In this document: in pieces, positions 50,641 to 53,199 of the stretch | Numbering within the stretch: the first letter of the stretch is position 1 | Layout: each line of letters opens with the position of its first letter | Made by a program: the position numbers and the translations under genes | Assembly (NCBI RefSeq): GCF_963853765.1 | Contig: NC_088860.1 | Span: 23,808,001 to 23,872,000 of the forward strand | DNA length: 64,000 nucleotides | Source of the DNA: Magallana gigas | Taxonomy: Eukaryota | Reading direction: 5' to 3' | The notes under the pieces: model-generated | What the model saw: only the letters and a program-made list of their open reading frames with translations | Databases searched by the model: none | Told to the model about the DNA's origin: nothing

Positions 50641-51653
50641 TGGCTCAGGTGAGCTAAAAATCAGTTGAAAAAGAAATAATATTCATAATTGGCAAAAGGT
50701 TGAATAAAATATATTTGATTGTTGTGATGAAGAAAAATCTAATAATATCCTCAAGTAATATATAACTCCTATTCAAAAAATGTCAATATATCATTAAAAA
50801 AATATGAATGATCTCCCTTTGTCTGATAAACTGAGAATGCAAGGCACACTATCATGATCAAATACAGTAAATACACAGCAGTGAAATACATAATTAGGCA
50901 CTAAAACTACTAACAATACATAGCTACATGTACATGTAAACAATTTCTAATTGCAAGGATTAAAAATGTTGGAGTGAAATTAAAATGAAAACCACTATTA
51001 CGATTATAAACATTTACAAAGATATCAACTATCAATGTACCCTTTCCATTCACCTTCTGAATTAGCTGACATATAGAAGCTCTCCCATGATATTTTATGG
51101 TATAAGATTTCCAATTTTACTATTACTTTGACTGCTGTTTTCTATCCCTAACCCTTATATTATCAAGGGCAAAGAAAATCACACAGCTGAATAAAAATCA
51201 TAAATTATTTTGTTTTCAAAAACACTGGGAAAATTTTTTTATCAATTTTTTTTAGCCTTTTCTTTTTTAAATATACATGAAATCTTTTTTTATGAGCTTA
51301 CGTTGCTTCAAATGTATTGTATGCATTTTTTGATGACATATTATCGAACATTCATCGTCTAAGGAATGGTAGATCTTTAAAAAGCTCTAAAATAAATTTG
51401 CTTTGTCAAATAACATAGTAAATAACCATCCTCTTGCTTGTCACACTATCATCATAAAATTTCGGATGACATTTATCAAAAACAAAACTCAGTCCTGCAA
51501 TATTCCACACCTTTAAAAGGCCTTATCTCGAAGCTGTACGTCTTTCATTAAACAGTTGATTTCAGCTCTCATTTCACCATAAAGAACAATGATGACCACT
51601 TCATCACGCCATGTCTTGCATTTCTTGGTCTGGGATGGATAACTCTATTTCAT

Positions 51654-51740
51654 CTACCAAGACATTTCTAAACCAATGTCTAGCATGTCAACCATGTCTT
51701 GTATTTCTAGGTCTGGGATGGATAACTCTATATCATCTTT
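51654..51740 (-). pseudogene. Displaced relic of the transporter C-terminal coding sequence (KDDIELSIPDLEIQDMVDMLDIGLEMSW*)
   Basis: In frame with the last exon if the 51741..52693 element is removed leaving one CG. Contains a second copy of exon sequence TGGTT(C/T)AGAAATGTCTTGGTAG. Confidence 0.6.
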
Positions 51741-52693
51741 CGCGCGGGGGTGTTAAGGAAGCATATGGGCAATTAAGCGTCATATTTTGACTGTTATATT
51801 CAAAATCGTGAAATTAAATAATTATTTTGAATAAGATCAAAAACTTAGTATTATCCTTTAAAATAGATGCCAATGCAATAAAATCGGGTAGTACATTACT
51901 GCCACATTGGTACATTATCACGTGATAAGTATAAATAGCTTACGTATGTTCCTTAACATAAAATGAGATAGAACAACACTACCCCGCGGTTTCCAAAATA
52001 AAATAAGCATACCAAGTGAAAGCAAAACATCTCAGCTTTATCAAGACCGCTGCTAGAATCCTATGCCTGTCCTTATTAAAAAGTTATTCATCCGGTACTT
52101 GTAAAACCTTCCCAACTTTTATATAGTTTGCACGGAAAACGGCAAATTGCATCAAAACAACACACAACATGGGATTCTAGCAGCACTTTTCAATTTAAGC
52201 ATTGATAAAACTAACGATACGTACAAAATTTCAAGTTCAATATATATAGGGTAGTGTTGTTCTAGTCGGATTTTTACATCGTAAACAACGACAGAGGAAA
52301 GCCTGGCCGAGAAATAAAAGCAAATTTACATACCTTTTAGCGAATGATTGATAAAACTAACATCCCCCCTAGTATTCTTATGTTCAATTCTCAATAAATC
52401 ACACCACAATACTTTATTAGAGTTCTTAGATTAGTTATATTTTGAATATGTTTACAATGCTTTCCGATCAAATTCACACGACATTCAACTTTTAGTCATG
52501 ACGTCATCAATGTGTAAATCTACGTAATACAAACTAATTTTTGGGAAAAAATTGTCTTCAGTATTTTTTATTTGTTTTTGATCTACGTTTCGTTGCTTAG
52601 ATATTTGAATATATACATAATAACTAAGATTTGTGATTTCACGGAATTACATGCAACTTGAGATTCCATATGCTTCCTTAACACCCCCGCGCG
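51741..52693. mobile_element. ~950-bp TIR element inserted in the last coding exon of the SLC16 gene
   Basis: Perfect 28-bp inverted repeat CGCGCGGGGGTGTTAAGGAAGCATATGG at 51741..51768 and 52666..52693. Internal fold-back TAGAACAACACTACCC / GGGTAGTGTTGTTCTA at ~51969 and ~52249. Confidence 0.85.
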
Positions 52694-53126
52694 GAGGTCT
52701 CCTACCAAGACATTTCTGAACCAGTGGTAGAAAGTAGAGCATGGCTCCACTAATGGCTACCATGGTACCCGCAACGTAGAAAGAAATATCATAGCTTCCT
52801 GTGCCATCATACAACCAACCTGTAATCATAAAATTCAACATTCATTAGTAAATATATACTGTAGGTACATTGATATGGACATACATGTATTGCTGTAATA
52901 GTATTGTGACTGAATAGATACTCTTTTTATATTCATGATAGATTTGATCACCCCACAACCAAATTATCACCTCATAACATTCAAACAATGATTCCTTATT
53001 TACTTATATTTATATAGTTTTCAATTTAAGCAGATTCTCGCTTCTGCCTTAATTATATGCCATTTGAATTTACTGGACTGTATAGTACAATATCCATACA
53101 TAGTATTATCAATGGCAAAGACACTG

Positions 53127-53199
<73 letters not shown>

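What the first reader, a model, noticed from the sequence alone, without database searches (positions are those of the whole stretch)
51654..52693. Transposon insertion has replaced the C-terminal tail, stop codon and 3' end of the SLC16 transporter; the old tail is still readable
Seen: a perfect 28-bp inverted repeat (51741..51768 / 52666..52693) whose right copy lies inside the last coding exon. The current ending [14 protein letters not shown] is therefore element-derived, and the element offers AATAAA signals at 52567 and 52413 (minus). Removing the element and leaving one CG restores ...LGRRPP-KDDIELSIPDLEIQDMVDMLDIGLEMSW*, a 28-residue acidic tail with no internal stop. The far flank also carries a second copy of last-exon sequence (TGGTTTAGAAATGTCTTGGTAG at ~51654-51675), which ties the two flanks to one original exon. 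Inference: a young, possibly polymorphic insertion that swaps an acidic cytoplasmic tail for a short new one. The TSD is ambiguous (CG, CGCG or GCGC), and only CG restores the long frame. A CG target would be unusual for known MITE superfamilies.
Basis: partly seen in the sequence, partly recalled or inferred. Interest (0 to 1): 0.8.

Follow-up and report, generated by a model that had tools for sequence, protein, structure and literature searches.

The report
Polymorphic transposon truncating a duplicated oyster transporter
A 949-bp non-coding DNA transposon sits in the last coding exon of a fast-evolving extra copy of an oyster monocarboxylate-transporter gene and replaces its acidic tail, but other oysters carry the same locus without it, so this is an ordinary, well-documented insertion polymorphism rather than a new kind of biology.

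Summary
The perfect 28-bp inverted repeat consists of 26-bp termini of a 949-bp non-autonomous element (51743-52691) plus a 2-bp target-site duplication, CG. The family has over 300 copies; 29 of 31 inspected copies have a perfect 2-bp duplication of variable sequence. Two kinds of empty site exist. A paralogue 6 Mb away joins PP to KDEIEL through one CG.

Refinements:
- The 28-residue tail is itself derived. Orthologues end in about 17 acidic residues; a 97-bp tandem duplication that predates the element added 12 frameshifted residues.
- The host gene is a diverged duplicate: 440 aa versus 590 aa, a 147-residue loop deleted in frame, and 34 of 37 replacements on its own branch (branch dN/dS about 0.9). 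No RNA read could be assigned to it.
- A 2-bp duplication matches the published ISL2EU rule, so the CG target is not anomalous. No autonomous partner was found.

Verdict: new member of a known kind, low to moderate interest.

The parts
51743..52691 (.). Non-autonomous terminal-inverted-repeat DNA transposon, 949 bp, GC 32%, with no ORF longer than about 37 aa
   Evidence: At least 40 full-length copies at 95-96% identity. Conserved termini CGCGGGGGTG...CACCCCCGCG. This copy is 3.2% from a 31-copy consensus, with 16 private differences. ORF list.
51743..51768 (.). Left 26-nt terminal inverted repeat
52666..52691 (.). Right 26-nt terminal inverted repeat; on the minus strand it is translated as RGGVKEAYG
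51741..51742 (.). Target-site duplication CG, copy 1
   Evidence: Family rule of a 2-bp duplication. The empty-site allele L078 has one CG where the two flank alignments overlap by 2 nt.
52692..52693 (.). Target-site duplication CG, copy 2; it supplies bases 2-3 of the second Pro codon
52647..52819 (-). Last coding exon (E5) as it now reads. 52819-52692 is host sequence ending ...LGRRPP. 52691-52650 is 14 element-encoded codons ([14 protein letters not shown]). The stop TAA is at 52649-52647.
51654..51740 (-). Displaced pre-insertion tail: 28 codons (KDDIELSIPDLEIQDMVDMLDIGLEMSW) plus TAG
   Evidence: Translation. The same tail (KDE instead of KDD), joined directly to PP, is encoded by element-free allele P0160/L078.
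51692..51738 (-). Tail segment, copy A of the tandem duplication
   Evidence: Direct-repeat family D1, 94% identity, spacing 83; alignment A2
51679..51691 (-). 13-nt filler between the two duplication units (TTGACATGCTAGA)
   Evidence: Present in both the window and L078, absent from the paralogue
51609..51678 (-). Copy B of the duplication: a second copy of the exon-end motif (51678-51656) plus the tail segment (51655-51609). Fourteen nt (AGGAGAyCTCCGAA) are missing between 51656 and 51655 relative to L078.
51604..51606 (-). Ancestral stop codon TGA (...QDMA*), now out of frame and downstream of the TAG in use
   Evidence: Comparison with the paralogue and orthologue tails
52567..52572 (-). 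AATAAA inside the element, 75 nt downstream of the current stop; use untested
   Evidence: No RNA read could be assigned to this allele.
52413..52418 (-). Second AATAAA inside the element; use untested
53200..53325 (-). Exon 4
   Evidence: Gene model with GT-AG introns, all phase 1
55819..56460 (-). Exon 3. An in-frame 441-bp deletion (147 residues of the TM6-TM7 loop) relative to the paralogue and all orthologues has its junction at 56146/56145.
57031..57174 (-). Exon 2
61170..61407 (-). Exon 1, with ATG at 61407

Best explanation
A non-autonomous cut-and-paste DNA transposon inserted into the last coding exon of a lineage-specific duplicate of a conserved SLC16/monocarboxylate-transporter gene. 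It is 949 bp long, has 26-nt terminal inverted repeats, and belongs to a family of over 300 copies that always duplicates 2 bp of target. Here it duplicated a CG inside the second Pro codon of ...LGRRPP. On the assembled haplotype, translation now runs from PP into the terminal repeat, adds 14 element-encoded residues and stops at an element-borne TAA. The acidic cytoplasmic tail is thereby cut off.

Shown: the insertion is polymorphic, because element-free alleles of the same locus exist in other oysters.

Inferred order of events: (1) a segmental duplication of at least 13 kb created the extra gene copy (dS about 0.095); (2) a 97-bp tandem duplication in the tail shifted the frame and turned the ancestral tail of about 17 residues (KDEIELSIPDQEMQDMA) into a 28-residue one; (3) the element inserted into the upstream duplication unit, and on that haplotype a 14-bp deletion also removed the equivalent site from the downstream unit.

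Inferred consequence: the host copy evolves almost neutrally, has lost 147 residues of its central loop, and gave no assignable RNA reads. The insertion is therefore most likely a nearly neutral lesion in a decaying or at least strongly relaxed duplicate, while the conserved paralogue carries the ancestral function.
For: Element and duplication rule. 29 of 31 copies have identical 2-bp flanks of ten different sequences; P about 5e-33 by chance.

Empty site in the paralogue at C8:17.88 Mb...CCT CCG|AAA GAT GAA... = RRPP|KDEIELSIPDQETQDMA*.

Empty site at this same locus: L078/L079 match the window at 97.3% on both sides, with a 2-nt overlap (CG), against 83-93% to the paralogue. They encode P0160 with the 28-residue tail. 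DNA contigs of two further studies (X9, X7) run from window-type intron 4 (5 differences and 0 gaps in 429 nt) through E5 across the CG into tail sequence, at single-copy depth.

Ancestral tail: orthologues from a congener, Ostrea, Saccostrea and Pinctada all have short acidic tails.

Duplication before element: L078 has the complete 97-bp duplication and no element.

Relaxed host copy: 34 of 37 replacements fall on the window branch, 25 of them at sites invariant in six outgroups. Pairwise dN/dS is 0.51, which implies about 0.9 on the window branch. L078 has three further replacements in E5.

Expression: every RNA read listed at the diagnostic sites (52724, 51590, 51620, 56157, 56189, 56191) carries the paralogue's letter. 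Depth on the window-specific half of E3 is 0 to 0.5, against 8 to 17 on the shared half. The paralogue is represented by a spliced 2.7-kb transcript contig.
Against: The reading frame of the window copy is intact over 425 aligned codons, with canonical splice sites. There is one indel, in frame, where intron indel density (10.6 per kb) predicts about 6.7 on one neutral branch (P about 0.01). If the tail events are counted, P rises to 0.03-0.17. This suggests selection kept the frame for part of its history.

The upstream region is 97% identical to the paralogue's, so a promoter may be present.

Only two RNA runs of unknown tissue were examined, about 1% of each was read, their individuals may not carry the element allele, and most difference rows were not displayed.

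The element allele itself was seen only in the assembly.
Confidence: 0.72

Rival explanations
1. The window copy is a functional, fast-evolving (neofunctionalising) paralogue with a shortened loop. The element allele is then a consequential variant: it removes an acidic tail needed for trafficking or partner binding, supplies a new 3' end, and acts as a loss- or change-of-function allele that may be under selection.
For: The ORF is intact, the splice sites are canonical, and there are fewer frameshifting indels than intron density predicts. The remaining TM6-TM7 linker of about 30 residues is long enough for an MFS fold (established knowledge of MFS architecture). Replacements are clustered rather than scattered. 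The acidic tail is conserved across oysters in the orthologue. The element offers AATAAA 75 nt after the new stop.
Against: Replacements hit 25 sites that are invariant from oysters to scallops. Branch omega is about 0.9. No assignable RNA was found. No window-type E3 protein exists in a database of 5.8 billion proteins within the length range searched. The tail has already been altered once by a frameshifting duplication, and an allele carries three more replacements in 42 residues.
Confidence: 0.22
2. The element-free sequences are not alleles of this locus in this species. They come from the paralogue or from a sister species, and the insertion is fixed here.
For: The species of SRR327447 and SRR327429 is not known to me. 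L078 differs from the window by 2.7%. The X9 and X7 contigs extend only 35 nt beyond the junction.
Against: X9 and X7 carry the same coded organism label as the best holders. Their contig matches window-type intron 4 with 5 differences and no gap in 429 nt, whereas the paralogue's intron 4 differs by about 14% with indels. L078 matches the window far better than the paralogue on both flanks over 1.6 kb. No listed run holds more than 0.60 of the words of the stretch, less than expected for a deeply sequenced carrier.
Confidence: 0.04
3. Assembly artefact: the element was placed here by mis-assembly of a repeat.
For: The family has over 300 near-identical copies, and the element allele was not seen in any laid run.
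Against: The insertion has a perfect 2-bp duplication exactly as in 29 of 31 other copies. It has 16 private differences. It is linked to haplotype-specific changes in both flanks: the 14-bp deletion, the substitutions at 52724 and 52728, and three in copy A. This is not what a collapse or chimera produces.
Confidence: 0.02

Closest known systems
ISL2EU superfamily of eukaryotic cut-and-paste DNA transposons (PHIS assemblage: PIF/Harbinger, ISL2EU, Spy, IS5)
   Same: Terminal inverted repeats with a 2-bp target-site duplication. PMC4122938 states that ISL2EU generates a 2-bp duplication while PIF/Harbinger and IS5 generate 3 bp. It also records that ISL2EU families have been catalogued from the Pacific oyster.
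   Different: No autonomous partner (THAP-DDE transposase plus YqaJ ORF) with these termini was found. The paper calls the duplication 'typically AT'; here only 1 of 29 is AT (TA 9, TT 6, AA 3, CA 3, CG 2, ...). Membership therefore rests on duplication length alone.
MITEs and other non-autonomous TIR elements inserted in coding exons (insertion polymorphisms)
   Same: Non-coding, high-copy and homogeneous, with TIRs plus a target duplication. It creates a premature, element-encoded C-terminus and is present or absent among individuals. Bivalve genomes are rich in DNA elements including MITEs (PMC10294476).
   Different: At 949 bp it is larger than classical MITEs. Its terminal repeat happens to be open in the host frame for 14 codons.
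SLC16 / monocarboxylate transporter family (named orthologues: 'monocarboxylate transporter 9-like' in Ostrea edulis, '12-like' in Saccostrea cucullata)
   Same: MFS_1 domain; best NCBIfam model is TIGR00892 (monocarboxylate transporter); DGGWGW motif at the N-terminus; long TM6-TM7 loop and cytoplasmic C-tail in the conserved paralogue.
   Different: The window copy lacks 147 residues of the loop, carries replacements at 25 otherwise invariant sites, and on this haplotype has lost the acidic tail.
Unprocessed pseudogenes and relaxed young duplicates
   Same: A segmental duplicate with strongly asymmetric protein evolution (34 versus 3 replacements), branch omega near 1, structural lesions accumulating in the coding sequence, and no detectable RNA.
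   Different: There is still no stop codon or frameshift in the 425 aligned codons, so it cannot be called a pseudogene on sequence alone.

Membership tests
ISL2EU DNA transposons | 2-bp target-site duplication | tested here: met
   29 of 31 copies have identical 2-bp flanks outside the conserved termini; P about 5e-33 by chance. Rule taken from PMC4122938.
ISL2EU DNA transposons | Target duplication typically AT | tested here: inconclusive
   Spectrum: TA 9, TT 6, AA 3, CA 3, CG 2, TG 2, GA 1, TC 1, CC 1, AT 1. It is A/T-rich but not AT. 'Typically' is not a strict criterion.
ISL2EU DNA transposons | Autonomous partner encoding a THAP-DDE transposase and a YqaJ exonuclease ORF between the same termini | tested here: inconclusive
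   All 30 loci around terminal-repeat hits are standard ~942-bp copies or truncated ones. The genome has 145 YqaJ matches, but none lies within 10 kb of the listed chromosome-1 hits.
Tc1/mariner | TA target-site duplication | tested here: not met
   Only 9 of 29 duplications are TA, and ten different dinucleotides occur.
PIF/Harbinger | 3-bp target-site duplication (TWA) | tested here: not met
   The duplication is 2 bp. A 3-bp reading is incompatible with the flanks.
MITE / non-autonomous TIR element | TIRs, a target duplication, no coding capacity, many homogeneous copies | tested here: met
   Its size (949 bp) is above the usual MITE range.
SLC16 / monocarboxylate transporters | MFS fold with a match to the MCT subfamily model | tested here: inconclusive
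   MFS_1 is above its cut-off (175.8 bits for the paralogue product, 91.9 for window E3). TIGR00892 is the best NCBIfam model, but at 310 bits it is below its curated cut-off of 586.
SLC16 / monocarboxylate transporters | Monocarboxylate transport activity | not testable with these tools
   Needs heterologous expression and uptake assays.
Pseudogene | Disabling lesion (stop or frameshift) or loss of expression | tested here: inconclusive
   No stop or frameshift in 425 aligned codons. No assignable RNA in two runs. Tail truncated on this haplotype.

The most novel reading that the evidence does not exclude
The duplicate is a neofunctionalising transporter whose C-terminal tail is under diversifying or balancing selection. 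The allelic series would then be functional variation caught in a polymorphic state: a 28-residue tail made by the tandem duplication, and a 14-residue element-encoded tail with an element-supplied 3' end. The transposon's terminal repeat would be serving as new coding sequence.
Probability: 0.07. Interest if true: 0.6.

Novelty: new member of a known kind. Interest (0 to 1): 0.3.

Why it matters
It is a clean, fully resolved example of how a gene copy is taken apart step by step after duplication: a loop deletion, a frameshifting micro-duplication, then a transposon. Intermediate alleles are still segregating. It also shows that a 2-bp-duplication element family has been active recently enough in this oyster to be polymorphic. 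For transporter biology it offers a natural allelic series of the cytoplasmic tail, but only if the copy proves to be expressed. For genome annotation, the 440-residue model with an element-derived C-terminus should be flagged as haplotype-specific and probably non-functional, and it should not be used as the representative of this transporter.

Tried and rejected
(1) I tried to use the share of sampled words per run to separate carriers from non-carriers. This is unreliable because 63% of the stretch is the multi-copy element. It gives only a soft hint that no listed run (maximum 0.60) holds the whole allele.

(2) From the joint 51655->52692 I first concluded that X9 and X7 lack the tandem duplication as well as the element. 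I withdrew this. Their contigs reach only 35 nt past the CG, and that stretch fits copy B of the window as well as copy A of a duplication-bearing, element-free allele such as L078. They prove 'no element' only. Whether an unduplicated allele exists at this locus is open.

(4) The search for window-type exon 3 proteins in other assemblies found only paralogue-type sequences at 81-83% identity. The length filter excludes full-length 440-residue products, so this is weak evidence.

(5) Earlier notes of this scan contain nothing on this element family or gene.

(6) I considered that the 14-bp deletion in copy B is an excision footprint of the same element, and that the local cluster of substitutions reflects error-prone repair. 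Nothing tests this, so it is left as an open observation.

(7) Structure prediction, complex prediction and RNA-family searches were not used, because they would not bear on the question.

Full report
**Observation.** Arms 51741-51768 and 52666-52693 are 28 nt, 100% complementary and 897 nt apart. The gene is on the minus strand. Its last exon (52819-52647) runs into the right arm and ends ...[20 protein letters not shown]. The two AATAAA motifs (52572-52567 and 52418-52413, minus strand) and the 28-codon open frame beyond the left arm (51740-51654, KDDIELSIPDLEIQDMVDMLDIGLEMSW*) are as described. So is the second copy of the exon motif at 51654-51678.

**The element.** A search of the window's own genome (564 Mb) with the 953-bp stretch returned at least 40 full-length copies at 95-96% identity. 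The 23-nt core of the terminal repeat occurs 325+332 times with up to 2 mismatches and never in the reversed control.
- Flanks of 31 independent copies show invariant termini CGCGGGGGTG...CACCCCCGCG.
- Immediately outside them, 29 of 31 copies have a 2-bp direct repeat: TA 9, TT 6, AA 3, CA 3, CG 2, TG 2, and GA, TC, CC, AT once each. The chance probability is about 5e-33.
The duplication is CG, the element proper is 51743-52691 (949 bp), and its terminal repeats are 26 nt.
- The element has no ORF above about 37 aa.
- The copies are homogeneous: median 2.6% from consensus, this copy 3.2% with 16 private differences.
- Nearly all terminal-repeat hits belong to standard ~942-bp copies.

**Empty sites.** The DNA downstream of the element has one other match in the genome, 6 Mb away on the same chromosome. 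That locus is a paralogue, colinear with the window gene over about 13 kb at 85-93% identity including introns. Its last exon reads ...CCT CCG|AAA GAT GAA ATA GAG..., that is LGRRPP|KDEIELSIPDQETQDMA*.

There are also element-free alleles of the window locus itself.
- Searching the last-exon ORF against the protein collection returned P0160 (78 aa), which ends ...LGRRPPKDEIELSIPDLEIQDMVDMLDIGLEMSW.
- Its two identical genomic contigs (L078 from SRR327447, L079 from SRR327429) match the window at 97.25% from 53164 to 52692 and at 97.4% from 51742 to 50635. The two alignments overlap by exactly 2 nt, the single CG.
- The same contigs match the paralogue at only 83-93%.
- Independently, Logan contigs of two DNA runs from different studies (X9, X7) run from window-type intron 4 (5 differences and no gap in 429 nt; the paralogue's intron 4 differs by about 14% with indels) through E5 and across the CG into tail sequence. 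Their depth equals that of neighbouring single-copy bins.

The insertion is therefore polymorphic. The element-bearing allele was seen only in the assembly, and no listed run holds more than 0.60 of the sampled words of the stretch. That is a soft hint that the allele is uncommon.

**History of the tail.** Full-length orthologues all end in a short acidic tail after the conserved KCLG(R/H)(R/K)PP:

| Source | Tail after PP |
|---|---|
| Same-species transcript product P0001 | KDEIELSIPDQETQDMA |
| Congener P0003 | KDEIELSIPDQEMQDIA |
| Ostrea edulis | TDEIEISAPQEEEMKPLSA |
| Saccostrea cucullata | QDLVEISVAEQEDEMKTMAA |

Pinctada also has a short acidic tail. The 28-residue tail is thus derived. 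The alignment of the paralogue, L078 and the two window flanks shows a tandem duplication of about 97 bp. Each unit holds the exon-end motif, the PP-K codons and the tail, and the units are separated by a 13-nt filler. Because 97 is not a multiple of 3, the frame shifts after ...QDM and reads VDMLDIGLEMSW* through the filler and the second exon-end motif. L078 carries the complete duplication without the element, so the duplication came first. On the assembled haplotype the element then entered the upstream unit, and the downstream unit has lost 14 nt that span its own copy of the target site. Whether those two changes are connected is unknown.

**The host gene.** The window gene model has five exons, GT-AG introns all in phase 1, and encodes 440 aa. 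The paralogue encodes 590 aa and is 99% identical to P0001, which is encoded without introns on a 2.7-kb transcript contig. Relative to the paralogue and every orthologue:
- The window copy lacks 441 bp (147 residues) of the TM6-TM7 loop, in frame.
- Of 37 amino-acid differences in 425 aligned codons, 34 are derived on the window branch, and 25 of those are at sites invariant in six outgroups from oysters to scallops.
- Pairwise dN/dS is 0.51 with dS 0.095. If synonymous changes are split evenly, this puts the window branch near 0.9 and the paralogue branch near 0.1.
- The L078 allele has three more replacements within the 42 residues of E5.

In two poly-A RNA runs, every read listed at the diagnostic positions carries the paralogue's letter (52724, 51590, 51620, 56157, 56189, 56191). 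The part of exon 3 where the copies differ too much for cross-mapping has depth 0 to 0.5, against 8 to 17 on the shared part.

Against simple decay, the frame is intact and there are fewer indels than the intron density of 10.6 per kb predicts. P is about 0.01 for the aligned coding region, weakening to 0.03-0.17 if the tail events are counted. I therefore rate 'relaxed, probably silent duplicate' as more likely than 'functional divergent paralogue', but not settled.

**Mechanism.**
- Shown: a cut-and-paste-type insertion with a 2-bp duplication places the terminal repeat in frame with the host exon. As a result, 14 element-encoded residues and an element-borne stop replace the acidic tail.
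- Inferred: any transcript of this allele would need a new 3' end. The element offers AATAAA 75 nt after the stop, but no RNA evidence exists.
- Inferred: the phenotypic effect is small, because the conserved paralogue is intact and expressed.

**Comparison with known systems.** PMC4122938 states that ISL2EU elements make 2-bp duplications (typically AT) and PIF/Harbinger 3 bp, and that ISL2EU families are catalogued from the Pacific oyster. The family here meets the 2-bp criterion and fails the Tc1/mariner (TA only) and Harbinger (3 bp) criteria. It therefore works like an ISL2EU-mobilised non-autonomous element, but membership is unproven. The host protein is MFS_1 above its cut-off, with the monocarboxylate-transporter model TIGR00892 as its best match, though below that model's cut-off. 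Bivalve genomes are known to be rich in DNA elements including MITEs (PMC10294476).

**Verdict.** It is nevertheless an ordinary class of event, a polymorphic transposon insertion in a diverging gene duplicate, rather than a tail swap in the principal transporter. One earlier inference of mine, that X9 and X7 also lack the tandem duplication, was withdrawn because their contigs extend only 35 nt past the junction.

Noticed in passing
window 56146/56145 (exon 3, minus strand); paralogue G000:C8:17880143-17880583: An in-frame 441-bp deletion removes 147 residues of the TM6-TM7 cytoplasmic loop from the window copy. The deleted part includes the YRKDIFYSGSL stretch, which is conserved in most of the bivalve orthologues and present in near-identical form in the rest.
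   Followed up: yes
window ~62850-64000 versus G000:C8:17869720-17869860: A 70-bp tandem satellite lies upstream of the gene. The window has at least 16 units, seen as a ladder of 64-aa ORFs and repeated BLAST hits. The paralogous position has only about two units.
   Followed up: partly
window 50700-62300 versus the paralogue: Divergence between the two gene copies is mosaic: 2.9% upstream of the ATG, 3.6-5.8% in intron 1 and the 3' flank, and 13-14% in introns 2 and 4. Amino-acid replacements are clustered (codons 37-44, 62-72, 152-173, 253-275, 339-347), while exon 2 and exons 4-5 are almost unchanged. This may reflect gene conversion between the copies.
   Followed up: partly
window 51655/51656: The 14-bp deletion in the downstream duplication unit removes exactly that unit's copy of the element's target site (AGGAGAyCTCCGAA). 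It is flanked by AG microhomology. It could be coincidence or the footprint of an earlier insertion and excision.
   Followed up: no
window 52692-52728 and 51692-51740: The host sequence immediately around the element carries 5 substitutions in about 110 nt relative to other copies or alleles. Three are differences between copy A and copy B of the tail (copy B matching X7); two are at 52724 and 52728 relative to X9 and X7. By contrast there are 3 in about 300 nt of intron 4 and 0 in 167 nt downstream (X7). This is a local cluster of changes on the element haplotype.
   Followed up: no
window 55014-55761 and 52957-53143: Introns 3 and 4 contain further high-copy repeats. DNA contig depth there is 10^4 to 10^5 against about 200 for single-copy DNA, and both strands appear in RNA. 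The repeats were not identified.
   Followed up: no
window 53150-53200 and L076 ~4870: A (GA)n microsatellite directly follows the exon 4 donor site in both gene copies and in allele L078.
   Followed up: no
G000, genome-wide: 145 matches to the YqaJ exonuclease domain (PF09588), many in open frames of 280-790 aa and in identical-length groups. They look like several transposon families carrying this ORF.
   Followed up: no
window 51969-51984/52249-52264 and 52049-52065/52168-52184: The element contains two nested internal inverted repeats, of 16 nt (perfect) and 17 nt (94%).
   Followed up: no
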